Under the pieces are notes generated by a model. The model was not told where the DNA came from. It was given only the letters and a program-made list of their open reading frames with translations, and ran no database searches. A DNA stretch of 64,000 bases from Kudoa neothunni (Eukaryota > Animalia > Cnidaria): contig OZ199840.1 in assembly GCA_964304625.1 (NCBI GenBank), positions 10,239,220 through 10,303,219 on the forward strand. The letters are read 5' to 3'. Positions 10,981 through 61,733 of this stretch are shown here, piece by piece; positions within the stretch are counted from its first letter, which is position 1; each line of letters begins with the position of its first letter. The position numbers were made by a program, and so were the translations under genes.

Positions 10981-13030
10981 TTATACGAAACCTTTTTGGC
11001 GACTTTCGATTTGAACAAATTTTTTAGATCTTTTCACATAAAACAAGACACCAACAATCAGCAATAATATAACTACTCCAGCCATACTACTTGTAATTGC
11101 AGCCACGTTCGTTTTACTCATACTATTAGTAACCGATGTGGTAGTGCTTTTATTTGTTTGAATGTCAGTAATGGATGAGTCAAATATTGGGTCTGTTATA
11201 GTTGAGGAGTTAGATTCAGTCTCTGAAGTGTTTATAGGCTGGTTTACACCATTAACATCCTTAACGATTTCTTTATCCAAAATCTCCTTATTTTGATGTT
11301 CGGGCACTCCTTTATTTTTTGATCCCCTTTTCAAAATTTCTTCTTGCGAAGATGGATTGTCTGTTTGAGTGTGCGGGACATTTGCCGCATTTTCTTGGGC
11401 GGGGGGAATAATTTCTAAAATAAGGTAAATCCTTAACAGGAACTACTACATGCACGTTTATTTCAGAAATTATATTACCTGTAGGTAAGTTGAATTGATT
11501 TATCAATTTTCCAGTTTCTTGTTCCAATTGAATCATATAGGTAGTAAACGAAAATCTATCGTCACGAACCATGCCATCTATTTCGCTAATGCGCGACTTC
11601 GCAGTATCGATTATAGTTAGATAGTCAGTAATTTCTTTTGAATCTCTAGTGGAAACATAACTGTATACATTTTGAGAGTATTTTGATAATTTGATTTCGA
11701 TTGGGTGACCAGGTGTTAAATTATCATTCTGTATTTCATCTATAACAGAAAGAACTTCTTTTGTAATCTCTACACTTCCTTTCTCGTTTGTGGCCTTATT
11801 TAAAACATTGTCACGTTTTGCTGAGATGTCTTTTATTAAAGCTTCCAGTTGAGTTAGTTTTGATATCTGAATAGCTCTTTTGGATTTTATGACCTCCAAT
11901 TGACTCATATGATTTTGCAGTAAATTTATTTTGGCTTTCAACAAAGAACTGACTTCTATAGTAAGTTGATGGAGGTTCTCTGATACTTTTTGGATTAAAG
12001 TATTTATTTCATTGGTTTTTTGTTCAGCCTTAACTTTACTTACATCTATATTTCTAAATGAACTGTTTAGTTTTGCAATTTCACTCAAGAAATATTGTGG
12101 TGTATTTTCATGAATCTTTTCTATCCAATCTGAATAGGTTCTTAGTTCTGTAGACAAACTATTTTTTAAATTATGAGTTTCCCCTGCAAATTTTCCTATG
12201 TCAGTTTTTATGTCTTCGTATTTTTGAATGGTGGTTTTTATAATGGGGTTTATTGAAGGAATCACTTTACCTGTTTCACATGTGTCTTTTATCGCATCAA
12301 CATCGCTTTGTATTTCCGAATATGTTTGATCTAAATTGTCCTGTATTTTGTAAGAGCTGATTATATTTTTATAGATATTTGCGTCATTTCGAACATTACC
12401 ACCGCAAACATCCTTTGCGGTTTTTATAGAGGTGAATAATAAATCAATATAATCATGCTCATCTTTAATACGTTCAATTGCCAATCGGGCTTTCTGGATT
12501 TTGGTCCTTAAATTAGAGTTTTCGTTTGATAGATCTTTGTGTGCAGTTCTCGAAGCTTTTACGTCATTTATTAAGCCATCGAATTGCTTATAGTATTTCG
12601 ATAATACTGCATTAACAGCTGGAATCTTTTCTATGATAAACTTTGCATCTTTTAAGATTTTCAAAGCTGAACTCATCTTTGAGAACGTATCGTGTGGGTT
12701 CAAAACGTAATGTCGTGGATTTATCTCTTTGCTTCTGAAATCACGTTCCAGCTGATCAATGTCGCAATGTTTAAAGTCTTTGTCACCCAAAGTGTATTGA
12801 CTTCTCATATATTTTTCAAAAGGTGCATTAGGATTATTGGTGCATTTTATTTGATGCATAGTGGTGAAATCTCTATCATTTTGTAATTTGAGGCCACTTT
12901 CGTTGTCAAATGAGCGATCCAAAAATACATCAGCTCGTAATAGACTACATTTAACTAGAGATATTAGTTATGAATATTACATCAATATTTGAAATAATTT
13001 ACTTGATATCAATAGCAACAAAAACCACAT
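10981..13030 (-). CDS. Helical-ectodomain type I surface protein, copy 1 (frame break near 11400-11480)
   Basis: Signal exon 13030-13003 (MWFLLLLIS), 48-nt phase-1 intron 12955-13002, then the long ORF. The stalk, TM (SSMAGVVILLLIVGVLFYV) and tail are in another frame. Paralogous to the genes at 16.6, 23 and 60 kb. Confidence 0.8.
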
Positions 13031-15641
13031 TACCCTCTTATAAATTTCTTTAGATACCGATGGATTTTAAATATATTAACTTTACACAAATTATATCAAT
13101 ACTATAAATATGCATATATTTAATATTCAAAAACATTATATATTATTAAAATCGTGTTATACTGTATATTGATTAAATAAAATTAAACAAGTCATTAGGT
13201 AGATTGTAATTAATTTTTAATACAAATAATTATACCGTCCCTGATTCTAATTAAACACAAAATACAGTTTTTATTAGTAATAATCATTCATTTGTAAGTA
13301 GCGTGTTTCCGTTATTATAAGACCCAATGATATTTTTGAACTAAGTTTTAATATAAGATTTAGTTAAATACTCAAAATCTGGTTATTTTGAATTATATAG
13401 CGAAAAATCTCTAATAATAAAATTTTATGGGTAGTTGATAATAATTAAACTTTCAAAGTAAAGTAATCATTTTTAACATAGATTTCAACATTTGATTGTC
13501 AATTATCTTCATTTTTGAGGAAACGATAAATATACTTATCAAATTATATGTTCCTCGTCGTATTTCTTTCAATTAAATGTTATTTTGTGTATTAAAAAAA
13601 AGTTTTTATTATATTTTTGTTATCTGAGCTAAATAATGCATAGAAACTATTGACTGCCAAAAATATTAGACCTAACGCTCCTTATTAAACTAAAAAATAT
13701 AAAACCTGACCTATATTCGGGGTAACACGGTAGGTGATTAATCGTAATATAAATATATCTCACTCATATTTAAATTTTTTGTAAATAATAAAAGTTTAAA
13801 TGTTAATAAATATACCTATTATAAAATTTATCCAATATTGTTTATTAGTAAATTTTACCCGTTAATACGGTGATATGTGGAATGGACACAGTCCATCAGC
13901 AGGATCAATTATAGGATGTAAATATAATCGCATATATTTCCTATAGTTTGTGTTTGAATGATTTTGTATAATTATATTAGTTATATATTAATAAATATTT
14001 TTATTTTATGGATTTAAAGTGTATCTGAAGGTTTAATTCTTGCCTCCAAAAACCGATATTCAACCATTTAACCATTAGTAGGAATTCTTGTCTGGAGCGA
14101 CTAGCTAAACAAACAAAACCCTTTACGTTTCAACAATGATATAAATTGTAAATCCTTATATAATAATAGCAAACTTCAAAAACGTTTAAAAAATAATTAT
14201 TTTCTCTAATATTTATTTCAATAAGAGAGATTAGTTTAGAAATGCAATAGAAACTTTTTTCATCGATATAAAAACGAAGCAAGTGGGGAACGTTGGCCAC
14301 CGCTAGGTTTCAAGTTTGTCACCGAGTAAAAAATTAAATCAACTATCTTTCATACTATAGAGAGAGAGAGAGAGAAATAAACGTAAAGAAACAAAAAAAA
14401 TTGTATATTGAAGCCAATATATTTTTATTTTGAACATTGGTTATACTTACCCGAATAATTAAATCGACCAAAATATCCTCAAAACTAATGCATCGAGTGT
14501 TTATTATTTATCATTTTGGCGATTAAACATTTTGAGAATATTTTCTTAAAGTTTGATCCCATTATTTCGATTTCTTAGGAATAATATGACTTGGGTGATT
14601 TAGTTACATTCTGATCCTCCGATAGTTAACAAGTAATGATTGGTAGAAACATAATAAATATTATACTGTTTAATTTTAAACACCCAAGTTGATTAAAAGC
14701 CTAAGAATTTGCCTCCTAAGCACGCAACATCTAACACGCTTGATTTTATCGTTCAGCGAACTTGTACGAAGTGTTATATTAGCTTGCCGAATTGGCTTCG
14801 GGAGGATTAACTGACCCAATGAATCATCTTTTTCCCAAAATTCAGCCGGTAGAAATTTTTTAAATTTTGTTTAACTTTTTGAAATATTTTTTTATTATCT
14901 ATCGTAAAATAAAAACTTGAGGTCCAAAAGATCCCAAGTTGGTTAATTCGTTAGAGGGTTAATAACAATATTTTTTAGTTATTAGTTAATCAATGGGACC
15001 TTGGTAAAAGTTTTGAATGAGAAAAATAATTATAATTGTAAGTCAATTTATCAAAAAAACGAATGCCATTATTAAAGTGTATCGATGTGCATTAAAAAGT
15101 ATATATTGACACAATATTACAAAATTTCTACGTTTTGTAATGTTTTAACATATGAAAAACATTTTGTTATAATTAGTATTAAAATATGTTCAAAACTTAC
15201 TCTTTATCATATAAAACCTCAAAACAATTATTTAAATCTTATAGAAACCATTTTTTACCGATAGATAAATAGGTATTCTGCGAGAAATAATTATTAACAA
15301 ATTATTCGTGGCCCAATTGAAATATATGAAATAAGAAAATTATACCTCGTTCCCAATAATTATATTTGAGAATATTAAATTTATTATAAACGGCATTATG
15401 TATTATGTTAATTGAACTAATTATAAATATTATCGGAATAAAACTCATTTATGAATAAGGTCTTTTATTTGAACGAACTTTTATCACCTATAATTGATTA
15501 TTAGTAATATTTAAAATAAAGTGTATATAAATCTATTCAAAAATTATTATAAAAATATTACAAGAGCATTTTGATAGAAATTTCTGCGATAAAAAAGCTC
15601 ACGATTTACCGTTAAACTATAATGACGAATAATCCTTAAAC

Positions 15642-15911
15642 CAGTGTTTCCTAACCTTTTTTGTATCGCGCCCTACATTTTCCATAAAAAAAGTTCCATG
15701 CTCCATCTTTCTTAAAATTTTGTGTGATGCAAATCGTCAATTAAAAATTAGCGATATCGAAAATCGCGATATTGATTTCAAAGTATGTCATCATTATCCG
15801 TGTCACACCAAACTCAATATTTTTCGCGTCCCATCAGAGCGATTCATTAAACGTTTAAAAATTTCCATGCCTCACAAAAAATTTTTCACACCCCACCGGT
15901 GGGAAACACTG
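15642..15911. mobile_element. hAT (Charlie-like) MITE
   Basis: TIRs CAGTGTTTCC ... GGAAACACTG; 8-bp TSD CCTTAAAC / CCTTAGAT (6 of 8 match). Confidence 0.75.
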
Positions 15912-16574
15912 CCTTAGATTTGGATATATGGATGACATAAATATTTCATGACTTTATAACCATTTTTTATAAACAAAAATATGATTTATTATAATTTGAA
16001 AATATTGATTTTAACTCTCCAATGATGCGAAAATCGTTAGAAGATTAAAAAACTTAATTCTGTGCACAAAAATTTGGTGTAAATTCAGGTTTTCAAAAAC
16101 GATAAAATAAGCTTTAATTAGCTGATGTCTAATTAATATATTTTTATTTAGGATTTTTTATGAGATATGTAAAATTTAACGATTATTAATTTTTAAGTTA
16201 AATTTTAATTATATTATTATATAAAATAATAAGTTTATATATCTATAGATACCTTTACTAAACAAATATATCTTTAAAAATATTAATATTTTTAATCTAT
16301 AAAAATGAATACACATTTGTTTGTAATTTGATACATCAATAAGTCGTAAGCCAGTCTGTAAATAATCATTTTACAAAAACGAAGAATATATATTATCAAT
16401 TTATTATTTATATACATAAGTTAATTTAACAAATTATTGTTTTAACTGCATAATCTTGCGCACAATAAAAACAAACCTTTGAAACCATACAGAAATATGT
16501 TAAATCTAATAATAATCATACTTATAGTCAAATGTATTTGCAAATTTCAATTTTTATGGTCGATTTTCATGTTT

Positions 16575-18532
16575 TCAAAATATCCTGGATCTTTTCTGGT
16601 ACACCAAAACACCAACAATCAATATTATCACAATCGCTCCAATTAAACCACTTGACATTACGGCCATGTTTGCTTTGCTCATCCCATTATGAAACGAAGT
16701 GGTGGCATTTCCGTCCTCCTGATTGTTATCGTGATTAGGTGAGTCTAATTTGAGATTAATTGAATCTGATAAGGTTGAATCAGTCCCTAAAACATTTTTT
16801 CCTTTGTATCTTCATCACTATTCTTATTTGGTAAATTACCCGAAATTTCTTTTTGGTTCGAAGCTACTCCATCTCCTTGATCTGTAATTTCTTGAGAAGG
16901 ATCATTTAGTATTGGTTTAGTTCCTCTTACCAAAGCTGCATTATTTACTGGAACTTCTACAGGTCCAGATACGTCGATTGTATGTGACAAATTATTTTGA
17001 AAAGAGTTAAATTGATTACTCAATTTATCACCATCGTGGGTCAAACGTTTCAAATAATTGTCAATATTTGAATTAGTAAAAGCAACGAGGTCAGAAACAT
17101 CACTAATCTTAGATTTTAAATCATCTAATTTGGTTAAGTAGTTTTCAATATCAGTTGAGTCTCTAAATTTTGAATATGTGCTATGATATGCAGAAAATAT
17201 TGATAATTTGGATGAGATGGAGTGGCCCGGGGAAAGAGTATCGCTGTTTATAGCCTCAATAGCTCGAATCACTTCTTTTGATAATTCGATACTTTCTTTA
17301 TAATATTGGGCTTTACGTGAAATAGCACCATGGCCCTTTTGAAGCTCTTTAATGAGAGTCTCTAATTGTTGAATCTTTTTTGTTGGGCTATTCTCGTTCT
17401 CAGATTTTATCCTCTTTATTTGATTTAGGTGGCTTTGCAAGGAAGATATTGTTACTTTTATTAGTTGTTGGGAGGTACTATCAAGTTGAGGTAATTCTTC
17501 TGATATCTTTGTTATAAAGGTTTTCATTTTCTCAGTTTCTTGTTCGGCTCTTCCATAATTTGTTTCCATCATATCGAATGATGTATGCAGTTTATTAAGC
17601 ATTTTCACAAAATCACTGGGTGAGTCTCTAAATATTTTTTCTATCCAAGCCGAGTACAATTTACCTTCCGCAGTCATAGCGTTAGACAAGATTTGCAATG
17701 TTAAGCGAATATCACGTAAGCCAGTTTTTAAGTCCTTATATTTTTGACTAGTAGTAACAATAATTTGATCTATGGTTGGGTTGATTTGAACATGTTCACA
17801 TACATCCTTGAGTTTCTTAACTTCATTTTTAATATTAGAATATATTTGATCTAAACGTTCCTTTATTTTATAAGAACTTATAATATTTTTGTAGACATTG
17901 ATATCACTTTGAGGTTTTCCATTGCATATGTTTAATGAATTTTCAATTGAAGAAAATAATTTTTCAATGTATTCTCGATTTTGTTTTACATTTTCATAGG
18001 CAGATTTTGCTTTATTAATATTGTTCCGCATATTATTATTCTTCTCTAATAGTGCCATATGTGCAATATTTGAAGATTTGGCATCATTTATTAACTTTTC
18101 GAATTGATCATAATAGTCGAATAGAACCGTTTTAATCACTGGAATATTTTCAGTAACAAATTTTGAATCTCGCAAAAATTCGAATGTGAAAATCATTTTG
18201 GGATATGTTGTTTTTGGTTCATTAACATAATTTTCGAGATTGACGTCTATTCTAACGAAATTTTGTGACAATTTAGTGACATCACAATGTTGAAATTCCT
18301 GGGTATTTGAATCGTAGTTATTTTTTAAATATCTGTTAAATGGTATATTTTGATTATTGACACATTTTAAGCGGTGTATTTCAGCGATATTTAAGCCTCT
18401 AAAGGAGTCATCCAAAAACTCTCTTTCTTGTAATGTACCGCATACAACTAAAGATATAGTTCATGTATATTACATTAAAATTATAGTTAATTTACTTGAT
18501 ATCAATAACAACCATACCAACTCCAACCTCAT
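16575..18532 (-). CDS. Helical-ectodomain type I surface protein, copy 2 (frame break near 16790; shortened tail)
   Basis: Signal exon 18532-18496 (MRLELVWLLLIS) and 48-nt intron 18448-18495. The main ORF stops at 16787, but another frame continues TDSTL...SKANMAVMSSGLIGAIVIILIVGVLVYQKRSRIF*. Confidence 0.8.
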
Positions 18533-21500
18533 TATTTTCTTACTGAAATCGTTATATATCGAAGTAGTTAAAATATATTATTGTAGTATAAATTATATTA
18601 AACCATTACTTATAATAAAATTTGAGTGCAGAAACAGTATGCTTTTTTATAGTCTCGGTATAAATTAAATTAATAATTTTAAAATTGTAATAATTCATTC
18701 GTTTTGGAAAACTCTAGAAAACGGAAATATAACATAATAAATATCTTTCACTTGAAAGCAAGTTTCTGACATTTGAAAAAATAGTCTATTAGATATAATT
18801 ATTTTAGATATTATTAACATCTTATACCTTACATTTATAATTAGTTTGGTTATGCAATTAATTCAAGTTATATGCATTAACTACATTAAGACAGTAAGTC
18901 CACTCTAGAGATCTAAATATTACGGCATATTTTCCATTAAAACTTTAAAAGATTGTAAATAATTTCAGTTTTGTATTATTGAATATTTTTTGGTTGGAGA
19001 GAAAAATTTAATCCAGATTTTTAATTCGCAGCTTTAACCCCGACTCGAGTATTAGTACGAATCAGTCAATGGGTCTCTAGTTTAACCTTCGGAAAGTCTG
19101 AAAAACGACTTTGCACTTAATTTTTTTAAAGTCGAGTTGGCAGCATATATTTTTATATACATACAGGAAAAATATATTACTATTTCCTAATTATTAAAAC
19201 TGTTTTTTTCTATAAAACCTACAGAATAAGATGAAAACATGTATTACGAGATTATACTAATATTTGCCAGAAGTTTGAGTAGCATTAACTCGGTGAAAAC
19301 CTTCATTAGATTTTATAATTGATAATATTAGTGATACATTATGTATATTGTGTATTTATACGTATTGTAAAATTTAAAATTTATTACTCAATAGGCACAA
19401 CGCAGATAAAATCAGGTTATAATTAGAACGGAAAAATTCATTTATCAGATGAAATTTAATTAGTTCCAACAATGAATTTAAAATGAGAAACATTGGAGAG
19501 TTTTTTGCAGCAGTTAAATATTAATTTGGAACAAATTATTCAGGTTTTTCAAGTTCGAAGCCACACTACAGTGTCAACATCCTTTTCTATTTCGAGGAGT
19601 ATCATTCACTTCAATGTGGTCTATTACAAGACAATCTACTAGAGTTTCAAAAAATTTTAAAGTGAGAATTTGGGATTAACACATCTCTTTATAAATATGG
19701 AACGCATTTATTGACCCTCAAAGGAGGTATCACGATAATTTTACGATAGAGTCGAAGCAAGTTACAAATAGACCCAAGCACTTTTAGCCACTTTCCTCAT
19801 TAATATTCATTAAAATTTTATTTTTAGATAGATTAAGTTTTTAATTTTGTAATTTATTGTGTTAAATAATATGAATATTTCCTCCAAATAAAATGTAATG
19901 AATGCTTAAAATCGGGTCACAAATTTTATCAGGATAACCGAGTTTCAAACATTTTTTCGTCCCATAATATGCGAGAATAGAATAAATTAAACTTTTTATT
20001 ACGCCTCAATGCATCAAATCATATTTCTAATGGAAATTATGGTAAGGTCGACCCGTTATTGAAAGAAACAAGCTCATAGCGATTTTTTGTCAACTTCGAG
20101 ATTATAGAGAGGATTAAACTCACATCATATAATGCTCCTAATTTTTAGCTGGAGTAGACTTGAAATGCGATATAAATGGAATAATTTTAATTAGCACCCA
20201 TATTAAGTTAATAAATTTCATTTTTAAATGAGTTTCGGGCTATTCTTGACACCAACAAAAAACAGTAGTTTTACAAATAAATCACCATATTAAAAAACAT
20301 AAACATATTGAATTTTTTTAAACTATATATAATTATAATTTTTCATGAAACTTTATATAACCTGGATTAATGAACCTTGCAAATGGGCATCATACAATTG
20401 ACGCTGCAAGTTTTATTTATTGTGCTCTCTTGGACAAATGGAGCAACCTTACGTTGTATTAAATATTTTAAACAATATTCTGCGTAATTATGTCATCAAT
20501 ATCATGTTAATGATGAATTGCTTTATCGAAAACAACGGTTCTCTCATTCATTTTAGTTCCCGCACCTCTTCTCAAATGAGGGATTATTCCAAGGATATTT
20601 ATTAGTGGGGAAAATAATTCTAAAAGAATCCCTACTATCCTTATAGAAAATAAATTAACAATGAAAATGATTCTGCTTTAGAGAGAAAAGAAATCAAAGA
20701 TAAAAGTCAGCATTAATAATTAATTAAATTTTTCGACTATTTTCTTGTGTTTTTTTGATAATAATGAAATCTGAGAGGGTCTATTTGATAGATAAATAAT
20801 TCGATGTGAATTCTGAAAGATAAATTCTACGTTGTTGACGGAAATTTTACGTGACGCCAAAAATTCCGAATGCCTGCTAATTTTAATCCATCTCAAATAA
20901 TGGACCTTTGATTAATTCACGGTATTTTGTTACATTTTTTGAAGTGTATGATTAAAACACTTAATTAGCATTCGTATAGATAATAATACTTACAATTATA
21001 TAGTTTAATGTCAATTAAGTGGAAACTTCAATATAAAGATTTTTCTTTTCAATCAATGAAGTTTACTTTATCGAAAAATCCGTCTACAAATGCGTGAATG
21101 TTTTTTATGGTAGTATACTTAATACATATATGAAATATTTGGGTGCAATTATTTCTTACCCTAAAAATGAAATCAAGAAATAAATAAAAAGTTTTTCAAA
21201 TAAAAGCCTTAATTCACAAAGCCACAGTTTTAGCCATATTCACTACATATTGTCAATTATATAAAGGCTCAGCATGAATAAAATGAATTAGTATACGTAT
21301 ATTGTTTATTAATTAGCTTGATATTTTTTATTTTATCGAGAAATATGAGTTACAATAATTCACACTTGCGCGTAGTTTTGTTTTTTTGTTTAAATTGTAA
21401 ATTTAAGAACAAAGATGTGAATCAATCTCAAATTTAGTGATTTAGTTTATATATTTTTTTGAGTGCAATTTTATTTTTAGTTATAAACAATTTAATTGTT

Positions 21501-22952
21501 ATTTGCGCATAAGTTTATATATAAAAATATATTAGAGAACTTAACTAAATTTAAACAAACCTTCTAATTGGTTTATACAATGGATGAGGGGTAATACCCA
21601 GTTGGGCTCACGCGCATAATAAATATCAAATTATTTTTTGGTTATTATTGTAATAATTTATTTTAAAAAACATTTATTAATTCAGCTTGTTTGTTGCATT
21701 CCACGTATATGTCAGACAAATCTTCTTCTAAATTTTAAGTGTATTTTTAGAAATAAATAGAACCATTTTTTGTTGAATAATTTTTTGACATGGCCACAAC
21801 TCGCGCCAAATCTACTGCGCGTGTGATTTTATAAAAGATCTTTTGAGGTATTTGGCTTCTTACATTGCGTTTTAAGATTGTGATTACTTTTTATTTTAAA
21901 ATGATATTTTGCTTTTTTTAATGGGAGATCAAAAAACACCCAACAATGTTATATCATTATAAGAACACAGATAAGAGGGGATAAATTCTTGCATAATGGT
22001 TATTTTTATGTAATGACTACAAGTCTAATCCAAATAAACATTGGGGATGTGAAAAAAGTGCTAGAAACAGATGTAGTATCATTTCACTACTGTCAAATAT
22101 CTTTTTTTCGAGGAAAATACGACTTTAACCACGTCGTTACGTTTTATGATATTAAATGGGACTTTTATTAACGATATAATTAAAAAGTATGACGTAAATG
22201 AATAATATTCATCCAATAGGGTCTACTAAAATGGAACTTAAAATATTTTTATCGACGAAACACATACAATTCCAGTAAATACAATTTTAAAAAGAAAATA
22301 TCAAATTAATACCATAAAACAGTGACAAATCTTATTGTAAATTTTATCTGGAATCAATATCTTAAAAATATAATTAACAATTACAATAATTTCTAATCAT
22401 AATGTTATTTTGATATGAAACTTGCTTTTACCATTATTTTTTATTCAATTTATTCGTTTATTAATAAAAAGGAAATAAAGTATCATATTTTCATATATTT
22501 GTGTATATACATAAATATATTAAAAACCTAAATAAATTTTTTCAAAATTTCTTCTTACAACCAAGTTGACAGATTATTTTATTCTCAAAAGAAACTTGAA
22601 TCGCATAAAATCCGTACAAAAAATGTAAAACATTCTCGGACATGGAAGTTTTACTTGATTCAGTGTATGAGTCCCAGGAAGCCCGGCGTCACATGAATAT
22701 TCCTGTTTCATCAATGAGCACGCGCGAAACGAATGTTTTTGTGTGTTGAATCAATTTAATTAAATATTGAGAGGATTTACTTAAAAAATCGACAATATTT
22801 CAATGAATAATTTATTGATTAATCAGGTAAATAATATTATTAAGGCGAGAAATGTTTTTTGCCAAAAGAAAAACAAACTTTCAAAATTTAAAAAAATATG
22901 AATTGAATGCTATATTGTAAAATAAAAATGTAAATAATTCGTTTATAATTCT

Positions 22953-24933
22953 TCATGGTTCATTTTCGTATGGATGAAACCTATTAGACCATCTATGGTA
23001 AAATATGACACCAACAATCAACAATATTATAACCATTCCACCCAAACAACTTGATAATGCAGCCACATTCATTTTGCTCTTACCATCATTAAAATTTGTG
23101 GTGGCGTGTTCATTTTTTTGATTGTTATTATTATCAGATGGGTGTGTATGTGGATTTGTTTTTTGTTTGGGGATAGTTTTTGTCTCCTGAACCACCTTTT
23201 CCTTAGTTACACCCTCTTCATCTTTATTTGGTACCGTTTCTGGAATTTCTTGTTGGTTTGAGAGAGGGCTCCTTTCTTGATTTATGACTACCTGAGAATC
23301 ATCATTTTCGCTTGTTGTAACGTCTTTGAATGTAGGTTCATTCCTCACTTGTATTACTTCGGGACGTTCTACAATAGGCAATAAATTACCCCTATGGGAG
23401 TTAAACTGAGTTTTCATTTTTCCACCCTCTTGCATCAAATGACTTATATATCCATTAATAATTGTATTATCACCATAAATTTGGCTATCAGCATTAATAA
23501 GTCCCAATTTCACAGTATCGACTTTTTCTAAGTAAGCTTCAATATCAGATGACTGAATTGTTAGTGCATAAGTGTTTTTATTTGCGGTAAATCTTGATAT
23601 CTTTGAAGCCGCATGATGGCTAGGCGAGAATCTGTTGTTTTTTATGTCATCTAAAGCTTGAATCACTGCTATTGTTAATTCAACGCTTAGTTTGTGATTA
23701 GTGACTTTGTTCAAAACTTCCACATGATTGGTTGAGAGTTCATTAATGGAAGTCTCCAGTTGTCTCAGCGTTGCCAGATGATTTTCCTTGTTGGTTTGAA
23801 TTGTTTTCATTTGATTTAAATGAATTCGTAAGGTGGACATTTGTATTTCTAACAACGCTTGAGAGTCAGGAGATAGTTGAGGCAGTTTTACGGAAATTTC
23901 TTTTATTAAGTCTTCCATTTCTCTTGTTTTTTTAGCAGCTTCAATATACTTTTCTTCCGTATTTCGAAGTGATGTATGAAGTTTACTGTGGGTGTTCATG
24001 AAATGACTAGGTGAATTATCCTTAATTTTGTCTATCCAACCAGAATACGTTGAAACTTTTTCTCTAAATGTATCACACATATCCTGAATTTTTGAAGGGA
24101 TGTTATTTAACGAATTTTTTATTTCTCGATATTTTTGGAGGGTAGTATCAATGATAGGATTAATTGTAGGAATGCTTTCACCTTTTTCGCACACATTCTT
24201 GATTACTTGAACGTCGCTTTGTATTTCCAAATATTCTTCATCTAAATGTTCCTCGATTTTATAAGTGCTAATAATATTTTTGTAGACATTAATATCATTT
24301 GAAGGTCCGCCATCACATGTTTTCAAGGAAATTTTTATTGAAGAAAATAAATCTTCAATGTAGTCTTGATAGTCTTTTATATTTACAAGCGCATTTTTTG
24401 CTTCCTTTAATTTTTCCCTAAAATTATCATTTGCTCTTAATAGTGCTTTATGTGCATCTCTTGAAGATTTAGCATTAGTTATTAGGTTATCAAATTGGTC
24501 ATAGTAGTCAGTTAGAACTTCATTAATAGATGGAATATTTTTTGTTACAAATTTTGAATCTCGTAGTAATTCAAACATAGATATCATTTTAGGGAATGTA
24601 TTGTGTGATTCCCTGACGTAATGACGAGGATTCGTTTTTTGTTCGTTAAATTTTTTTTCCAGTTCTTTAATGTTGCAATGTTGAAATTCATCAATTTTTG
24701 CATTATACTTATCTTTAACAAATTGATTAAATGGTTTATTTTGGTTATTGACGCATTTCATTTGGTGCATTGCAACGAAGTCGGTCTCACCTATACCCTG
24801 AAGCGAATCATCCCAAAATTTTGTAGTTTCTAATATGCTGTATTGAACTAAAAATATGAGATCTATGTTGGATATAACTTTTTTAAACAAATATACTTGA
24901 TACCAAAAACAACAGGAAATACATTTTATCCAT
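22953..24933 (-). CDS. Helical-ectodomain type I surface protein, copy 3 (intact)
   Basis: Signal exon 24933-24897 (MDKMYFLLFLVS), 49-nt intron 24848-24896, then an uninterrupted ORF through the TM (SSCLGGMVIILLIVGVIFY) and tail (HRWSNRFHPYENEP*). Confidence 0.88.
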
Positions 24934-26989
24934 TGTAGATTCGTTAGCATTCGACTGATTCAAAAGAATTTCTATTCATTTTCTAAATACTAATACTATT
25001 ATAGTATTTCACTATCAAGATAAAAACACGTCTTATGAAGCAGCAGATTACTTTTATATTTTTCTTATTTTTAGATAAAAATAAAAAATTTAAGAATATG
25101 ATTGAATAGATTAAAAATACGACATTTTTAATATAAAAATAAAGATATGGATATAATTGTACGCTTTGTTCATATATATTGAATTATGAAATAATTAAGA
25201 CTGGTAGAAAAAAATGCAAGGTTTTTTGTTTTAAATATGACAGATTATACAATATATAAGTTATTTAAGAAAAACAACTAACAACATATAGCGCCACAAA
25301 CAACTTGTAAGTTAATAAATTAAAAAATTTCGAAGGAAACTACTGAAATTAGTTTCCAAAATTATACGAAGAATTTAAATGTTATTTCTGGACTTCCTTG
25401 TATAATAAAATGATTTTTAATTAATAATGAAATTATTATTTATGTTCAAATAATTCGCATCATTGTTAATCTATGTCTATTAAGCATGTTTGCATCTTAG
25501 TTGGACAAGTTGGCATTTTGACTGCTAAATACTGTATTATCATTAGGAGAGCTAACACAGTATATTTTATGAGAAAAAACGTTTATATTTGTAAACAATA
25601 ATCTAACCATAGTATTCTAAAATGAAACAATTATTAATCTCCGACTTATATAATTCTCTTCACTATGAATATATCATTATCCACCAATAGCATTTAACTT
25701 ATTCATAAATGAATAATGGGCTCAGTGTTATACAACTATATTTGTACAAGGAAGTGGTTATATCTCTGGGAATGAACATCTTTAAAACTACTGCAAATAT
25801 TTTATTCATATTTTAAGTATTATCTAATACAGTAGGTAACCACTTTTACGTAATCCCCTAAGGCCTAGGGGACAGGGAAAAATTAAAAATAGTCACTTAA
25901 TCATTTTAATCCAATTTGGATCGTGCGTAAACAATATGAATTTTTTTATATCACCATTGTACATGATTTAGGTTATAAACATTAGTCTTCTCGCAAAACA
26001 CATCCAAATACTCATTTTTATCGTCAGATCCACCAGAATTTGAATTTCGACAATCAAAAAAAGTGATATAAAATAATTCGTTTGAATTTCTCTCATATTC
26101 AATCAGAAAAATCTCATAAAAGCCTCCCTTAGGCTTCCGTCAGCATGTTTAGGGTAACTTTGTGCGAATGGCGCGGGAAAACGGATGCATCTGTGTCATC
26201 GCGGATGACCTCGTTTACATGTTTTCCTTATTTTCTCAATATTCTGTTATCATTTAAAACAATAAAACCCCTGGTCAAATTGACCTCAAAAACATCAAGT
26301 TTATTTTTTTGTATATCGTTGTTTAGTCTATTTTTTCAAATTTTTATTGAATAAGTATAAAATACTAATTATTTTAGGAGAATACACCAGATATTATAAT
26401 TGTTAAAATCTTCTATGTATATAAAACTTTAATACAATGGGCTCTGGGGTCAATTTGATCCCAGAAACGCTCGGGAGGTTAAAAAGGCCCAGGAAGACAT
26501 TTCATCTGATAAAATAATAAAATCTCGGAGAAAGTCTGTAATTCTAAGTAATCATTTCGACAATGTTTTAGTAATTGCGAATATAATTTTTTAATCAGAA
26601 GGTGAGAATTTGAGTACACCCAATGAAATTAGCTGTAATGATAAAGCTGAAGTTGAAGAAGAAATGTGTATAGAAATAATAATTTTGATTATAGCCAAAG
26701 TGAAATTAATGTAATAAATGATTTGAAGATAATTAGATAACAAGCGAACCTTTAAATATTGAGAGTAAACTAGAATGTGATATGGTATCTCAAACCTCAG
26801 ATAATCTGATTGAACCAAAATATTGAAACAATACTAACAAAAAGTATCCTATAAATGTTGGAAAACTGAGAATTCCCTTATCCAAAATTCACCAAGCTAT
26901 TTACTATGGAAATCCAATAGACAAAGAAATTATAGCTTGTTATGGACATAATTTTAGACATCATTATATAAAATTAAATAACAACTTAA

Positions 26990-37800: not shown

Positions 37801-40800
37801 TTTAAATTTACTCTTTATAATTAAATCTGACATTATTGCACGTATATTAAATGTAGATTGTTAACACCCCGAATTCATTAATATTTCATTAATTTTTTAA
37901 TATTTCCATAATATTGAATTGGATTTTATTATTAACTACGGGGAGAGTTGAACGAATCTATACTACGCGGAAGCTTATATTACCAATAAAAATTAGATAA
38001 GCTGCCCAATATAGAGTTTACGACCTTTTTAGTTATCTTCGACAATAATGTTGTGTTAATATTGAAGCAGTGAGATTCTCAAATTATAATGTTTAACACA
38101 AATATGTAGTAATTAACGTTCAGTTGTGCTATTAGTTTACTAGAGTAAAGATGGGTTTCCATGGAGCAGAGTATTAATTCTCAATCAAACTGTTTTTTGA
38201 CAATTGGATTGTTTGTTGAGTTACTAACAACGTTTGTAGGTCACGCAGATGCGGTCCGTGCCATTCTAGAACGAATGTCCTACATGGTGAACCCCGAGGA
38301 GGATATAATGTCGTCAATTCTTGAGGCAACTATTGACTGTCATGTTCATGTGGTTGAGTTGTTGTTGGATTTCGCCTCAAAAAATTTTGAGATTGACGAA
38401 GCGTTGAACTCACCTTTGACGTTAGCGGCCAGCGGGGGACACCTAGGTCTCGTAAAGTTATTCCTAGATTATGGCGCCAATCCTAACGATTTTAATGCGG
38501 AAGGCTTCACTCCATTGATGGAAGCTTGTCGTGAAGGCCACCTTGATGTAATTAGGTATTTTTTGTCGCCAGAAGTTGGCGCCCAAATCAACACCATCAC
38601 CAAAGAACACGGCGAAACTGCGCTCACTATCTCCTGTTGCAGCGGTAATTTGGAGACGGTGAAACACTTGGTAGAAGTGGGTAAAGCGTCCATAGAACTG
38701 GGTCATTCGCCACCATTGCTTGAGGCCGCTTCGGAAAATCATGCCGATATTGTGGAATATCTCATCAAAAAAGGTGCGGCTATCAACTCGAAAGGTTCGG
38801 TCGGTAGAGATGCTCTCTATCAAGCGTGTGAAGCGGGAAATATCGATGTCGTCAAAGTGCTTTTGAAACATGAGGCTGATATTGAGAGTTGTGCCGATGA
38901 CTCAAAAACTCCACTTATGCGAGCGGTTGAAAGTGGCCACATTGATATTGTGGAATACCTACTGTCTAAGGGTGCCCGTGTCAACTCTAGATGCTCATCA
39001 AGCGAATGGAGTCCTCTGATTATTGCGTGTCTGTCCGGAAATGTTATTATGGCTCGTTATCTGGTGGCTAATGGTGCAGATCCACGCGTAAAAATGACCG
39101 ACAACTCCTCTCTACTCATTGAAGCCACAAGAGCCGGCCATCTGAATATCGTAGCTTTCCTACTTAATCCATCCATGAGCACTCCTCATTTCCAAACCAA
39201 TTGTGATAATCATGCGGCAACGGGGACATCAACTTCAATCTCCACACAAACGGTGGTAATGCCACCTGTGAGTGACAACAAAATGCCGTCTGTCTATTGG
39301 CAAAGCGATTCATCGGAAATTGAGCGTCTTCGAACATTGATACCTCCTAGGATATTGGACCTCTACATGAAAGCCAACAAAATAACTGACAGAAACGCTG
39401 CATGCAATTCTATGGCTGCTGCTTTTCAATCATATTCGAAAAAATTATTTGATTCACCGCAGTGTGGCAACAACCAATCTTCACAAACAACAGTCACCAC
39501 TCAGGACGGTCACATTAAGAATGTACTACAAGTTTCTGATAAAACTCAGGCTTCAAGTGGCAACAACAACACAATCAAAAAGCCCACTCGTATGTGCGAA
39601 TATCACAACTTAATGGAATCCATGTCTTCGTTAGACTGGAATAGTTTGCCGAGTGATTTACTTTCTCTTAGCAACACTAACGATATTAAAGAGTATGCTA
39701 CGGCTACAACTGGTGATAATCAATGCATCGTTGATAACACTGGAAAGACTACCATCGCTATCAATAACAATAATAACGATGGAAACTGTTTTGGCCCACA
39801 CCGCAATATCAGTTTACTCAATCTACTTGAACATCTTAGTTTAAAAGGTTCTAAACTCGTGTCGCCAGTGATAGCTCAAAGTGATGATTGTTTTAACATG
39901 AACCCAGCGCCTTCTAACAGCTGTTGTGACGGTGGAGGACATAACGTCGTTGACTGCTGTTGTCTTGCCTCGTACGCTAACAAATATCTCCAAATGAATG
40001 ATGTTGGTTCGCCCATATCTGACGATTGTATTAGAAATGTGATAAAAAAAATCAACGCCCACTTCAAAGTCTGCTCAAACCCTTTCAACGATATTAACCA
40101 TCGCACAGATATCAACAGAGACAGTCCTCTTTCCATCGCCGCCAATATGGGCTATTTGGATATTGTAGATTATTTGGTGAGAAACGGTGCCGATGTAAAT
40201 ATTGTCGACCGTAAGGGATACACTCCTCTCATGGTAGCATGTGCTGCTGGACATTTTCATGTGGCCAACTATCTTCTTTCGCTAAAAAAAGTGGATGTGA
40301 ATGTGAAATCTGATCGAAATCATGACACAGCTCTCACCTTGGCCACCGCAGCTGGGCGAGTCGATCTTGTGGATTTACTGATTGATCGTGGTGCCATCGT
40401 TGAACATAAAACATCCAACGATTATACTCCACTTTGCTTGGCTTCACATAACGGTCACTTAGATATAGTCAAATTGTTGTTGGGTAGGAAAGCCAATGTG
40501 AATTGTCGCACTACCTACTCTCCATTGATTCTCGCAGTGATGAATGGACACGAAAAAGTCGCTGAATTGCTGATCAATTATGGAGCTGATGTGAATGCAT
40601 CAGTGGAATCCAATGGAAGCACTCCACTTTCCATCGCTGTCTATGCCAACAAAGCCAACTTGGCTGACCTTTTGCTTAAGAACGGAGCCGTACCTGATTG
40701 TAAGAACAAAGTTGGTTATACACCATTTATGGACGCAGTATCGTCAAACAATGTTGCGATTGGTAGAATTCTCTTGGATTACAACTGTGATGCCTCTACA

Positions 40801-46815: not shown

Positions 46816-48848
46816 CTACTGATGGTGATGAGTAAGGAGATCTGAAAGAATATTAAGAATTAATATCAGTCAATAAATCACCAATGAAGTTCCGTTTTTT
46901 AAAATAATAGTCATTTTTGTGAATTTATTTCATTACCTGGGATGGTTACATTACCAGATGGACACCCTGGTTCTATACATGGTGTCCTTCCTCCGGAACA
47001 TTTTAAACACTGTGGGCATTTCATACAAGCAAGTGGTAGGTTGATTTCAATTGTGTTGCAATCACCACATTTACAATTATCACAGACACTTGTGGATGTG
47101 TTGGAAGGATTAACTGTATTCTAATAGATATCATGTTTATTAATTTCAATCTTTGTGAATATTTTACGGATGATGAAGTATTCACTGTGGTTACACTTTG
47201 TCTAGAATTATAATTTTTTAGATTAGAAGTTTTCATCAAAATTGCCAATATACGATGAATCTTGTATATTGTTAAATGAAGTTGATAATGGTTGACCAGC
47301 AGTTCCAGTACTAGTACTACCAGTTCCTGTATCTGTACTTGTGCTACCAGTTCCTGTACCTGTACTTGTGCTACCAGTTCCTGTACCTGTACTTGTACTA
47401 CCAGCCGTATTTGCTAAATCACCAGTTGAAGACGGCTGTGAAACTGATCCATCGTCAGAAGAAGTCCCAGTTGAAGATGTATCTGACACTGACTCGATTC
47501 CGTTCAAATTACCAGTTTCAGATGTTGGCATACTTGCTTCACCTCCAGTTGGGGAACTAGATCCAATATAATTACAAGGTCGGAATAAATGAAATGTTTG
47601 TTTTATACCTTTGAACCTCAGCTGCGGCAGTTCCGACATCATCCATGCTTGTTAGTGTAGTTGATGATCCTTTGAATAAAGTTTAGAAACGTCTTACACA
47701 TTAACCAAAAATTGCGTGTACCCCCCGGAGGATTTTTGTTATTATTAACCCCAGATCCTGGTTTACCCGACCCCTTATTGGGTTGCTTGCCAGAACTATC
47801 TCCTGACGAGGTAGTACCAGCACTTGCACCTGGAGAAGGTGCGCTACCGCTACTAGCGGGGGCAGATGATGCTGAACCGGGGCTGCCTCCCGATGAAGTT
47901 GGAGTATTAGAACTACCAACGTTATTTAATTCCGAAGCTGAATTAGACTTCATCCCGTTATCATGCCCACCAGAAAACCCCATTTCTGAGGAACCCTTGC
48001 TACTTTCTGACGACGATCCCATATTATCAGAGTTAATATTATCATTAAGTCCCCCTTGCCCACTACCACTAGTTTCGCCTATACCGGGTCTTGAAAGGCT
48101 GGAACCTCCTTCTAATAAATTGCCACCCCCTGAATAAGACCCGAGATTGGAATCATTACTTGATGTTCCAGAAGACATGCCATCACCACCTAGAGTTGAG
48201 GAAGTTGGTGAGCCAATAAAATTAGCTATAATCAGGTGGTTAAACATGCGTTATGTTGTCTCTCATACGATCGGTGGATGAGCCCATTCCTTCTAAACTT
48301 GAATAGCCAAGTGAAGGATCAGACAAGGAATTTGCTAAATTATCATGTTGACATTAATGTGGGGTAGCTGTCGAAAAATATACAACTAGTGGGAGTTCCT
48401 TCATTATTGTAATCAAGATTTGCAATTGAGGATCCAGAAGTTTTTTCCACGACATCTCCACTACTGTCTACAATAATTAGATAATTGTCTCATGCATTGT
48501 TAGTAAATAAATACCGAGGTTTTGTTGGCTTCCAATTTCTGTTGAATCGGTTGGGCTTGTGCTTTCAAAAAGTGGGTCATCTTGTAGATTGAGAAAATTG
48601 GAGCGTTTATGGGATCTAGATTTGTGCAGAATTCTATCATGATTGCGGTGCTTTTTACCTACACCATAATAGCAACATTTAAAAAATACATATTTATCCT
48701 CAAAACAGATATACATTCAATTGTCAGTAGAAAAACTAATAATATTAATATTTTCCATATGATTTTTCTATTAAACTTATCCTACACATATGTGAAAAGA
48801 ATTATTTTCAGAAAAGTTCCATATAATTTAATTTACCTGAAAAATCAT
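46816..48848 (-). CDS. Secreted Ser/Gly/Thr-rich protein with KR propeptide and a 10-Cys domain (may be the N-terminal part of the 45505-46612 gene)
   Basis: Spliced start MIFQDKFNRKIIWKILILLVFLLTIECKKHRNHDRILHKSRSHKR|SNF..., about 11 exons, long S/G/T low-complexity region, then CDNCKCGDCNTIEINLPLACMKCPQCLKCSGGRTPCIEPGCP. Confidence 0.75.
47305..47402 (-). repeat. 27-nt coding tandem repeat (GSTSTGTGT, about 3.5 copies)
   Basis: Unit ACTTGTGCTACCAGTTCCTGTACCTGT repeated on the + strand. Confidence 0.85.
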
Positions 48849-59837: not shown

Positions 59838-61671
59838 TTATATATTTTCTCTACGAAATTTAAAATTACTCGGTGTAGAGCGTCTTTTTAGAATGAATAG
59901 GATGCCAACAACCAATAATACAATCACCACTCCGGTAACTCCACATGATATCATACTGACTTTCATTCGATTCTCAGAATTTTTGTTTTTATCGGATGTG
60001 GTTGGAGGAATTTTTGTTTTGAGGTCTGTCGCTGTTTGGTTTACCTGCTCTATTTCTTGAGTAGGAGAAGTTTTAGGATTTGCGTTCTCATCGGTTTGCT
60101 GTATTTCGTTGGATACATATAAATGCATAGATTTGACGGCGTTTTCTAATTTTTGGTAGTAATGCTCCAATTTATAATCGTAATTTATGATTTTTGCTCT
60201 TAATTGCATACCAACTATAACAATATCTCTAATTTTAGGTATTAATGTTGCAAATGAGTTATAATATTCTATCAATTTTTCATCATCCAATGTTCGAGTA
60301 AAAGCTTTTATTTTATCAGAATTATCCAATAAATATTTCAGACTGTAATAGCTTATTGAAAAATCGTTTCCTATAACATTTTCGATAATACCCAATACAG
60401 CGATTGCCATTCTTATATTAGATAAATCAGTTTTTGCAATCTCTACGTGTTTATGTTGTTCCGAAATTATGTTTTTGGATGATTCTATAACAGTCATGAC
60501 TTCATTTTGATAATTTTTCAATTCAATTTCGAAATTCTCAGAACGCTTCAAATGAGTGACTAGCAGTGAGATAACTGTTTCTATCACTTCCTTAGTTTCC
60601 GAAGATTTGCCAATAATGTTTTTAGAAATTTTGTCAATAAATATCTTTGCATTTTTTTTATTTATTTGAACCTGATTTAAAATATCACTTATTTCATGCA
60701 CTGCATAAAGTTGGTCTAGCTCATGCCGTAGGCGCGCTGGTATTCCTTCCATATTCTTTATCAAATCGGAATTTATTCGAAAATGTATTTCCAACTGTTC
60801 TATGTCATTAATTAAATTTGGTTTTATTCTCCCAAATGAGTTCGTGATATCTTGATATTTCTCCAGCACATCAGAAACTAATGTGGGTATTTGTGGAATA
60901 TTTTTAGCTTGATCACAACCAATTTTTATTTTGTGAATTTCCGCAGTAACATCAGTCATATATTGACGTAAACGATTTTTTATGTTATAACTGCTTATAA
61001 TGTTTCTATATTCTCTAGGGTCAGCGGTGGATTGATTACTGCAAACTTTAATCGATTGTCTTATGGATTGTAATATTTGATCAATATTGTGTGTGTATGT
61101 TATTTTTTTCTTATTTGCTTCTTTGGCATCCACAAGAATTTTCTTTAATTTATCATTTGCTTGATCTAATTTATTTAATTCATCAAATATTCTCCCCGTT
61201 TTAATTATTAAATCATCAAAATGGCCATAATATTTATTCAACCCTTCTCGTAGGTAGGAATACTTTTCAGTCACTAATCTTGACATTTTTAAAAAACGAA
61301 ATATATCATTCATGTCATGGAGTGTTTTCAGCTTATTCGGAAAAATTGTTGTTGATCTATGCATTGAAGCTAATGCGTCATTTTCCAAGGTATTAATATT
61401 GCAATGATGATAGTCGCTCCCATCCATATTGTATTGATCCATAACGTAATTGTTGGTATTGAATGGAGCATTTTGATTATCTGTACACTTTATTTGATGC
61501 ATTTCTTCATCATCCGCATCGTCGTAAACGTAGAGATTTTGATCGTTATCAAAATTGTTGTCCAAATAATCAATACAAGTTGAATGTTTCAGTGTAACTA
61601 TAATATAGAATTAGATTATATTTTACTTTATTTCATGATTTACCAAAAAATAATAAAAGCGATAACAACAT
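59838..61671 (-). CDS. Helical-ectodomain type I surface protein, copy 4 (intact, most divergent)
   Basis: Signal exon 61671-61644 (MLLSLLLFF), 46-nt phase-1 intron 61598-61643; MHQIKC, HC, NIISSY motifs; TM GVTGVVIVLLVVGILFIL. Confidence 0.88.
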
Positions 61672-61733
61672 TTCCTTTCGTATATTTACGGGTGATTATA
61701 AATAAATGTTTCATTCATTATTTATACGATTAA

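What the first reader, a model, noticed from the sequence alone, without database searches (positions are those of the whole stretch)
10981..24933. Tandem family of disulfide-stapled helical surface proteins: candidate variant surface antigen or adhesin repertoire
Seen in sequence: three head-to-tail paralogs, plus a fourth at 59838-61671. All share a 9-12 codon signal exon, a 46-49 nt phase-1 intron, an ectodomain of about 480 aa with amphipathic-helix periodicity, and four invariant Cys (H.[IML]KC, HC, and two flanking NIIS[ST]Y.I). Each then has a length-variable polar stalk, a TM ending L[IV]VG and a short basic tail. By hand count, copies 1 and 3 match at only 53 of 110 positions in the N-terminal block, so the scaffold is kept while the sequence diverges. 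I recognise no known domain. Inference: the design parallels helical-bundle surface proteins of other parasites (trypanosome VSG/ISG, Plasmodium RH5/RBP) and may be an undescribed host-interface family. Those comparisons are analogies, not detected homology.
Basis: partly seen in the sequence, partly recalled or inferred. Interest (0 to 1): 0.8.

Follow-up and report, generated by a model that had tools for sequence, protein, structure and literature searches.

The report
Fast-evolving helical surface-protein family, Kudoa
A tuna-muscle parasite related to jellyfish (almost certainly Kudoa neothunni) carries about 25 copies of a gene for a membrane-anchored, rod-like helical protein with no detectable relatives elsewhere. 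The copies sit mostly near chromosome ends, swap segments and change their outer part unusually fast, as parasite surface proteins that face a host do. No expression data exist yet.

Summary
Four paralogous genes lie on the minus strand, each with a 9-12 codon signal exon, a 46-49 nt phase-1 intron, an all-helical ectodomain of about 470 aa with four invariant Cys, a disordered polar stalk, one TM helix and a short basic tail.

The family is larger than reported: 25 loci on all three chromosomes, 17 of them uninterrupted, and 11 of 15 clusters lie within 1.5 Mb of a chromosome end. Pfam, a word search, a profile search of 1.84 billion proteins, the PDB and the ESM Atlas give no relative. Fold matches stay within the background for helical bundles.

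Recent paralogs have gene-wide dN/dS of 0.6-1.6. In one pair the ectodomain has diverged two to three times more than introns, flanks and 4-fold sites. Four tandem copies are clear recombination mosaics.

Best reading: a lineage-specific type I surface family under diversification, probably at the host interface. Expression, localisation and antigenic switching are untested, because no parasite RNA was found. The protein databases hold no Kudoa, so spread within Myxozoa is unknown. No earlier scan note covers this family.

The parts
10981..13030 (-). Copy 1. Exon 1 at 13030-13003, intron at 13002-12955, ectodomain exon ending at the in-frame stop 11312. The stalk-TM-tail frame is open to 10981 in another frame.
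11401..11406 (-). C6 homopolymer where the reading frame of copy 1 changes between the ectodomain and the stalk/TM.
   Evidence: Contigs of runs X1 and X2 agree with the assembly.
16575..18532 (-). Copy 2. Exon 1 at 18532-18496, intron at 18495-18448, ectodomain exon ending at the stop 16787-16789. The stalk-TM-tail frame is open to 16575 in another frame.
16787..16839 (-). A 53-nt GTAATT..TTTTAG stretch containing the A6 run (16795-16800). Removing it as an intron would put the TM back in frame. This is untested.
   Evidence: read from the sequence; no RNA available
22953..24933 (-). Copy 3, uninterrupted. Exon 1 at 24933-24897, intron at 24896-24848, exon 2 at 24847-22953 encoding ectodomain, stalk, TM and tail.
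59838..61671 (-). Copy 4, uninterrupted. Exon 1 at 61671-61644, intron at 61643-61598, exon 2 at 61597-59838.

Best explanation
These genes belong to a lineage-specific multigene family of a myxozoan, almost certainly Kudoa neothunni. The family has about 25 loci, 17 of them uninterrupted.

Each gene encodes a type I membrane protein. A short signal peptide sends it into the secretory pathway. An elongated all-helical ectodomain of about 470 aa, probably braced by two disulfides, is held away from the membrane by a disordered polar stalk of 75-123 aa. A single TM helix and a short basic cytoplasmic tail anchor it.

The family grows and decays by tandem and dispersed duplication, mainly in the distal parts of the chromosomes. 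It exchanges segments between neighbours. Its ectodomain is under diversifying pressure, while the stalk base, TM, tail and flanks stay alike.

The most likely role is at the parasite's outer surface, as a binding or shielding protein that faces host molecules.

Shown: gene structure, family size and positions, lack of relatives, predicted fold class, substitution pattern, mosaicism.

Inferred: signal cleavage, disulfides, surface location, host contact.
For: - Gene structure is conserved in 17 members: exon 1 of 9-12 codons plus one base, and a phase-1 intron of 40-49 nt.
- C31, C57, C177 and C219, plus H27, K30, N36, Y47 and P226, are invariant across members only 17-43% identical to copy 3.
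- The AF2 model is all-helical with helices up to 63 residues and pLDDT above 90 over most of 20-490. It is disordered over 492-593 and has a TM at 590-622. The N-terminal part folded alone gives the same helices.
- TM segments and basic tails are present in the full-length members scored.
- The census gives 25 loci. Of 15 clusters, 11 lie within 1.5 Mb of a chromosome end, which is 22% of the genome (binomial P = 4e-5; contig lengths).
- No relative was found in Pfam, the word search, or the profile search of 1.84e9 representatives, whose 8 weak hits all fall on the stalk/TM part. The PDB sequence profile gave only coiled-coil noise.
- For L010/L011, GY94 omega is 1.64 and the likelihood-ratio statistic against omega = 1 is 5.66. 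For L005/L006 omega is 1.0, and for the C2 tandem cluster it is 0.64-0.73.
- For L010/L011 the ectodomain DNA differs by 13.4%. The 5' flank differs by 6.9%, the intron by 4.9%, the 3' flank by 2.8% and then 0.5%, 4-fold sites by 5.9%, and the stalk/TM/tail by 4.3%. Fisher P = 1.5e-12.
- Both copies keep open frames of about 600 codons.
- In the four tandem genes, 130 informative sites fall in long runs: 96 adjacent sites share a pattern, against 46.8 expected and a maximum of 68 in 10,000 permutations.
- In that cluster the flanks of L014, L016 and L018 differ by 0-7% while ectodomain pS is 22-26%.
Against: - There is no expression evidence. Two RNA runs with the host's label held no read of this stretch, and the genome paper reports very few parasite RNA reads (PMC12239612).
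- There is no localisation or binding data.
- Two of the three tandem copies in the finding have the TM out of frame. They may be dying genes or soluble forms.
- omega above 1 rests on one pair with modest likelihood support. Recombination can distort dN/dS.
- The 1.5-Mb threshold for the position test was chosen after seeing the data.
- K. neothunni plasmodia grow inside muscle fibres (general knowledge). The interface may therefore be host cytoplasm rather than the immune system.
- Fast evolution also occurs in self-recognition and reproductive proteins.
Confidence: 0.6

Rival explanations
1. The proteins act between the parasite's own cells. Possible roles are recognition, adhesion or fusion between the enclosed cells of the plasmodium and spore, or between sporoplasms or gametes. 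Such proteins also duplicate and evolve fast.
For: The same topology and fast ectodomain evolution fit this reading. Myxozoans have cell-in-cell organisation and a sexual phase in the annelid host (general knowledge). The number of members is moderate at about 25.
Against: Recognition systems rarely need about 20 highly divergent intact paralogs at 17-43% identity. The enrichment towards chromosome ends and the mosaic exchange are more typical of host-facing families. There is no direct evidence either way.
Confidence: 0.17
2. It is a true variant-antigen system. One or a few members would be expressed at a time, with switching helped by segmental gene conversion, as in protozoan parasites.
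For: The family is multi-copy and enriched in distal chromosome regions. Tandem members are mosaics. Upstream and downstream flanks are nearly identical around divergent coding regions in the C2 cluster. Decayed copies beside intact ones could serve as donors.
Against: There are no expression data at all. The repertoire is small next to var, VSG or VSP families. Most members are old, at 17-43% identity, rather than a cloud of recent variants. The loci lie up to about 1.4 Mb from the ends, so they are not strictly subtelomeric.
Confidence: 0.12
3. It is a structural or secretory-pathway protein family that is not exposed to the host, for example in the spore shell valves, the polar capsule or internal membranes. 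It would be evolving under relaxed constraint after duplication.
For: The long helices resemble many scaffolding proteins, and the best fold rows include TBK1/IKK scaffold domains, BAR domains and tektins. omega of 0.6-1.0 in several pairs is compatible with relaxed constraint.
Against: Relaxed constraint does not explain an ectodomain that diverges faster than introns, flanks and 4-fold sites while 600-codon frames stay open. The signal peptide, invariant Cys and TM followed by a basic tail place the helical part outside the cytoplasm.
Confidence: 0.08
4. It is an envelope-like gene of a retrovirus-like LTR element, because copy 4 lies just downstream of a Ty3/gypsy RNase H-integrase ORF on the same strand.
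For: The pol fragment at 62341-63954 (-) lies directly upstream of copy 4. A helical ectodomain with a TM and a short tail is also the outline of class I fusion proteins.
Against: Of the 31 stored stretches around the family's loci, only the one holding copy 4 holds any pol-like sequence in its flanks (tblastn). The genes have their own signal exon and spliceosomal intron. No fusion-peptide or cleavage-site pattern is conserved.
Confidence: 0.01

Closest known systems
Trypanosome three-helical-bundle surface proteins (VSG, ISG65, haptoglobin-haemoglobin receptor, factor H receptor)
   Same: Both are an elongated, mostly helical ectodomain with a few conserved disulfide Cys on a parasite surface protein, encoded by expanded and diversifying gene families. 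These structures recur among the weak fold rows: 4wjg_E at Z 10.7, 5vtl_A at Z 10.5 and 6soy_A at Z 9.5, and 4x0j_B in Foldseek at E = 0.065.
   Different: No sequence similarity was found. The fold scores lie inside the background for helical bundles. The anchor here is a TM helix with a cytoplasmic tail, whereas VSG has a GPI anchor. There is a long disordered stalk. The family has about 25 genes, not hundreds to thousands. The organism is an animal, not a kinetoplastid.
Plasmodium reticulocyte-binding / RH5-type helical adhesins
   Same: Both are helical, Cys-stabilised host-binding ectodomains of a parasite. PvRBP2b (6d03_E) appears at Z 10.0 for the full model and Z 8.5 for the N-terminal part.
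   Different: The matches lie within background, at 8-11% identity. No Pfam or profile hit was found. Size and domain layout differ.
Borrelia burgdorferi paralogous family 12 outer surface protein BBH37, and other helical-bundle surface paralog families of pathogens
   Same: It is a small multigene family of helical-bundle surface proteins. It is the top Foldseek row for the N-terminal part (8s2p, E = 0.03) and scores Z 8.3 over 169 residues.
   Different: The match is not significant. BBH37 is a bacterial lipoprotein. There is no shared sequence.
Surface families reported from the myxozoan Sphaerospora molnari (VSP-like, RIFIN/STEVOR-like, ETRAMP-like; bioRxiv 10.64898/2026.02.11.705288)
   Same: These are also lineage-restricted, duplicated membrane-protein families proposed for host interaction in a myxozoan.
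   Different: Those are Cys-rich CXXC proteins or small RIFIN-like proteins. Here the ectodomain is helical with only four conserved Cys. The only resemblance to ETRAMP, RIFIN or STEVOR is a set of sub-threshold Pfam hits on the stalk/TM segment.

Membership tests
Trypanosome VSG/ISG/HpHbR three-helix-bundle superfamily | Detectable sequence or profile similarity to family members | tested here: not met
   There is no Pfam hit above cutoff. The profile search of 1.84e9 proteins and the PDB profile search gave nothing on the ectodomain.
Trypanosome VSG/ISG/HpHbR three-helix-bundle superfamily | Structural match clearly above the background for helical bundles | tested here: not met
   The best trypanosome rows score Z 10.7 (4wjg_E) and Z 10.5 (5vtl_A). 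The tool states that Z below about 13 is common for helical proteins. Foldseek E is 0.065 or worse.
Plasmodium RH5/RBP adhesins | Sequence or fold match to the RBP/RH5 helical domain | tested here: not met
   6d03_E scores Z 10.0 and Z 8.5 at 8-11% identity, within background. There is no Pfam hit.
Plasmodium RIFIN / STEVOR / ETRAMP (Pfam PF02009, PF17410, PF09716) | Score above Pfam's gathering threshold | tested here: not met
   ETRAMP scores 12.9 bits against a cutoff of 29.1, on the stalk/TM piece of copy 1 only. The weak database hits carry similar sub-threshold matches in their TM regions.
ATG17-like / spectrin-like helical repeats (PF04108, PF25034) | Score above Pfam's gathering threshold | tested here: not met
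   ATG17_like scores 25.9-28.1 bits against a cutoff of 43. Spectrin_SYNE1 scores 11-12 bits against a cutoff of 35. These are cytoplasmic families, whereas this protein has a signal peptide and a TM.
Variant surface antigen system (functional class) | Multigene family of surface proteins with divergent exposed domains | tested here: met
   There are 25 loci, 17 uninterrupted, at 17-43% identity to copy 3. Surface exposure itself is inferred.
Variant surface antigen system (functional class) | Location biased to chromosome ends, with exchange between members | tested here: met
   Of 15 clusters, 11 lie within 1.5 Mb of an end (P = 4e-5, threshold chosen afterwards). The tandem genes are mosaics. 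Clades mix chromosomes. The loci are distal rather than strictly subtelomeric.
Variant surface antigen system (functional class) | Mutually exclusive expression and switching | not testable with these tools
   No parasite RNA was found in the runs laid. The genome paper reports very few parasite RNA reads.
Retroviral / errantiviral env | Gene lies inside an LTR element downstream of pol in most copies | tested here: not met
   Pol-like sequence flanks only copy 4 among the 31 stored stretches around the family's loci.

The most novel reading that the evidence does not exclude
An animal parasite (a cnidarian) may have independently built a protozoan-style variant surface coat. This would be a family of helical, disulfide-braced type I membrane proteins in distal chromosome regions, expressed one or a few at a time. 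Segmental gene conversion, with decayed copies as donors, would diversify it. Homopolymer frame changes in the stalk might toggle members between membrane-bound, secreted or silent forms.
Probability: 0.12. Interest if true: 0.9.

Novelty: new variant of a known kind. Interest (0 to 1): 0.62.

Why it matters
Myxozoans are animals reduced to a few cells, and almost nothing is known about the molecules on their surface. How they persist in immunocompetent fish is an open question.

This family gives that question a concrete starting point. It is expanded, has no detectable relatives, carries a confidently predicted helical ectodomain, and shows signs of diversifying selection and segment exchange. 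If it does face the host, an animal lineage would have converged on the gene-family strategy of trypanosomes, Plasmodium and Giardia.

There are practical uses too. Kudoa species spoil tuna and other fish flesh, and some cause food poisoning. Abundant species-specific surface proteins are natural targets for detection and typing.

One side result may help others. Weak RIFIN/STEVOR/ETRAMP-type hits arise here from stalk and TM composition alone, so similar claims in other myxozoans need care.

Tried and rejected
- **Pfam:** a scan of all four copies gave only sub-threshold helical or coiled-coil and TM/mucin hits.
- **Word search:** searching 5.8e9 proteins with copy 3 gave nothing.
- **Profile search:** searching 1.84e9 representatives gave 8 hits at E = 2.6e-5 to 5e-4. 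All fall on the stalk/TM part and belong to unrelated proteins such as LRR kinases and FHA proteins.
- **Database control:** the neighbouring ANK-KH gene finds vertebrate ANKHD1/ANKRD17 at 38-39% identity but no Kudoa protein, not even itself. These databases therefore say nothing about other myxozoans.
- **Foldseek against the PDB:** no match at E of 0.001 or better for the full model or the N-terminal model.
- **VIA-align wide search:** best Z is 12.4 and 8.7, within the helical background.
- **ESM Atlas:** nothing usable by shape or by features.
- **PDB sequence profile:** coiled-coil noise only.
- **Metagenome locus search:** I did not repeat it.
- **RNA evidence:** runs X10 and X11 gave zero reads, so this is no test.
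- **Env-of-a-retroelement idea:** rejected.
- **Intron to repair copy 1:** no GT..AG of suitable phase exists near the frame change.
- **Disulfide pairing:** not checked, because model coordinates are not exposed.
- **Joined spliced proteins (exon 1 plus exon 2):** not sent to any search or fold tool. Exon 2 was used by reference, and exon 1 is too short to search.
- **Literature:** searches found no description of this family.
Full report
**What is in the window**

The stretch 10981-24933 holds three genes in the same orientation on the minus strand. A fourth lies at 59838-61671.

I read the DNA upstream of each long ORF. In every case there is an ATG followed by 9 or 12 hydrophobic codons plus one base, a GT..AG intron of 46-49 nt, and a continuation in frame into the long ORF. 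A script that listed all ATG/GT/AG combinations picked the same models. Coordinates are given under 'parts'.

The four proteins align over their whole length. Identity to copy 1 is 38, 38 and 25%, and there are 59 invariant columns, including four Cys.

In copies 1 and 2 the ectodomain ORF ends early and the stalk-TM-tail sequence continues in another frame.
- By comparison with the other copies, the change in copy 1 maps to a C6 run at 11401-11406.
- In copy 2 it maps to an A6 run at 16795-16800.
- Contigs from two sequencing runs of one sample cover both places without a gap or mismatch. The frame changes are therefore in the reads, although these runs are probably the data the genome was built from.
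- In copy 2 a 53-nt GTAATT..TTTTAG stretch (16787-16839) would restore the frame if it were spliced out. In copy 1 no such solution exists.
- Both genes could be recently disabled, or they could make soluble ectodomains. RNA is needed to tell.

**The organism**

The window is C3:10239220-10303219 of a 40.26-Mb assembly. Its pieces measure 17.15, 12.04 and 11.05 Mb plus 18.2 kb.

This matches the published Kudoa neothunni genome recovered from yellowfin tuna data: 40.2 Mb, N50 of 12.0 Mb, three chromosomes plus a circular mitochondrial genome, and a median intron of 49 bp (PMC12239612). Earlier notes of this scan name the same species. A neighbouring 1763-aa ORF is an ANKHD1/ANKRD17-type ankyrin-KH protein, which fits a metazoan.

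**The family is larger**

I searched the genome with copy 3 and with a profile of the N-terminal 255 residues, then inspected the weaker loci. This gives 25 loci:
- 17 are uninterrupted from signal exon to tail.
- 3 have a frame change before the TM: copies 1 and 2, and one interrupted at a (CAAA)n run.
- 1 is truncated and lacks a TM.
- 4 are decayed, with several stops.

All 17 members modelled keep the signal exon and a 40-49 nt phase-1 intron. They are 17-43% identical to copy 3. C31, C57, C177, C219, H27, K30, N36, Y47 and P226 never change.

The loci form 15 clusters on all three chromosomes. Eleven lie within 1.5 Mb of a chromosome end, a zone that covers 22% of the genome (binomial P = 4e-5). 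I chose the threshold after seeing the positions.

In the tree, the window's copies 1-3 group with a gene on chromosome 1. Copy 4 groups with two genes from the other end of chromosome 3. Members have therefore moved between distal regions.

**Structure**

AlphaFold2 with the 17-row alignment gives a confident model, with pLDDT above 90 over most of residues 20-490.
- It has short helices up to residue 111, then long helices of 45-63 residues.
- A disordered stretch covers 492-593, and a TM helix covers 590-622.
- The N-terminal 255 residues folded alone give the same helices, with pLDDT 84.5.
- Stalks are 75-123 residues long and 15-23% Ser+Thr. Tails are short and basic.

**Relatives**

None was found.
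- Pfam gives only sub-threshold hits.
- The word search gives nothing.
- The profile search of 1.84 billion representatives gives eight weak hits confined to the stalk/TM part of unrelated proteins.
- The PDB sequence profile gives coiled-coil noise.
- The ESM Atlas gives nothing usable.
- Foldseek finds no match at E of 0.001 or better.
- VIA-align gives a best Z of 12.4 for the full model and 8.7 for the N-terminal part. The top rows mix TBK1/IKK scaffold domains, HD-PTP/ALIX, BAR domains, trypanosome receptors, PvRBP2b and a Borrelia surface paralog. The tool states that such values are usual for helical proteins.

The fold class is a long helical bundle. Kinship with any known family is not supported.

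One limit matters here. A control search with the neighbouring ANK-KH gene returned vertebrate proteins at 38-39% identity and no Kudoa protein, not even the query itself. The databases therefore hold no Kudoa. The family may well occur in other myxozoans, and absence is shown only outside them.

**Evolution**

Pairwise dN/dS is high among recent paralogs. By GY94 maximum likelihood it is 1.64 for L010/L011 (likelihood-ratio statistic against omega = 1: 5.66), 1.0 for L005/L006 and 0.64-0.73 within the C2 tandem cluster. Old pairs give 0.26, where synonymous sites are saturated.

For L010/L011 the divergence figures are:

| Region | Divergence |
|---|---|
| Ectodomain DNA | 13.4% |
| 5' flank | 6.9% |
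| Intron | 4.9% |
| 3' flank | 2.8%, then 0.5% |
| 4-fold sites | 5.9% |
| Stalk, TM and tail | 4.3% |

Non-synonymous change in the ectodomain exceeds these neutral proxies (Fisher P = 1.5e-12). Both genes keep open frames of about 600 codons in an AT-rich genome. That pattern argues for selection for change, not decay.

In the four tandem genes at C2:11.05-11.10 Mb, the 130 informative sites fall into long runs that support different pairings along the gene. Adjacent sites share a pattern 96 times, against 46.8 expected and a maximum of 68 in 10,000 permutations. Flanks of L014, L016 and L018 differ by 0-7% while ectodomain pS is 22-26%. These genes are recombination mosaics with homogenised flanks.

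**Interpretation**

The topology places the helical part outside the cytoplasm: a short N-terminal hydrophobic segment, conserved Cys, and a TM followed by basic residues. Family expansion, distal location, mosaicism and ectodomain-specific excess change add to this. Together they make a diversifying surface family at the host interface the best reading (0.6).

The rival readings are a role between the parasite's own cells (0.17), a true switching antigen system (0.12, a special case of the main reading that needs expression data), and an internal or spore structural role under relaxed constraint (0.08). The idea that the gene is an env of the Ty3/gypsy element next to copy 4 fails, because none of the other stored stretches around the family's loci has pol nearby.

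**Limits of this work**

- No RNA of the parasite could be laid on the stretch. Two RNA runs with the host's label gave zero reads, which is no test.
- Joined exon 1 plus exon 2 proteins were not sent to any search or fold tool. Exon 2 was used by reference, and exon 1 is too short to search.
- The literature searched contains no description of this family. The genome paper does not use the words 'surface' or 'gene family' at all.

Noticed in passing
window 13599-16288: Contigs of runs X1 and X2 join 13599 to 16288 with the letters TTAAAAC in between. This looks like a second allele lacking about 2.7 kb of the spacer between copies 1 and 2. The missing part holds repeats with raised depth (14350-14950, 15750-15950), so it may be a transposon insertion polymorphism.
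   Followed up: no
window 18549-18561, 24941-24953, 61678-61690 (minus strand), and the matching places in L004-L009, L013, L014-L019: A motif CG-N7-ACGA lies a few to about 20 nt upstream of the ATG in 13 of 17 family members, including members whose flanks otherwise do not align. The window has 16 matches against 8.3 expected. Some lie before other small genes, so it may be a general Kudoa promoter or 5'-UTR element.
   Followed up: partly
window 38161-43452 (+): A single uninterrupted 1763-aa ORF encodes an ANKHD1/ANKRD17 (Mask)-type protein with two ankyrin blocks and a KH domain, at a higher GC of about 40%. The best database hits are vertebrate proteins at 38-39% identity, and no myxozoan protein is in the databases.
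   Followed up: partly
window 62341-63954 (-), running off the window end: A Ty3/gypsy-type RNase H plus integrase ORF lies directly upstream of copy 4 on the same strand. This adjacency is unique to copy 4.
   Followed up: yes
window 47223-48247 (-): Two adjoining ORFs of 139 and 202 aa are very rich in Ser, Thr and Gly, with STGTG-type repeats. They look mucin-like and may be another secreted or surface gene in this region.
   Followed up: no
L012 / L015 (G000:C2:8.640-8.642 Mb): One family member is split into two frames exactly at a (CAAA)n microsatellite inside the conserved NIVSSF motif region. This is a third case of a simple-sequence frame change in the family.
   Followed up: partly
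stalk/TM parts of the family (e.g. window 10981-11334) and database hits P0001, P0002, P0005: Polar stalk plus TM segments alone draw sub-threshold Pfam hits to ETRAMP, RIFIN, Stevor, sialomucin and EssA. Reports of RIFIN/STEVOR/ETRAMP 'homologues' in myxozoans (bioRxiv 10.64898/2026.02.11.705288) could rest on the same compositional effect.
   Followed up: no
L024 (G000:C2:8.395 Mb): A member has the signal exon, intron and the four-Cys N-terminal domain, but then a different low-complexity C-terminus and no TM (397-aa open frame). It may be a secreted derivative of the family.
   Followed up: partly
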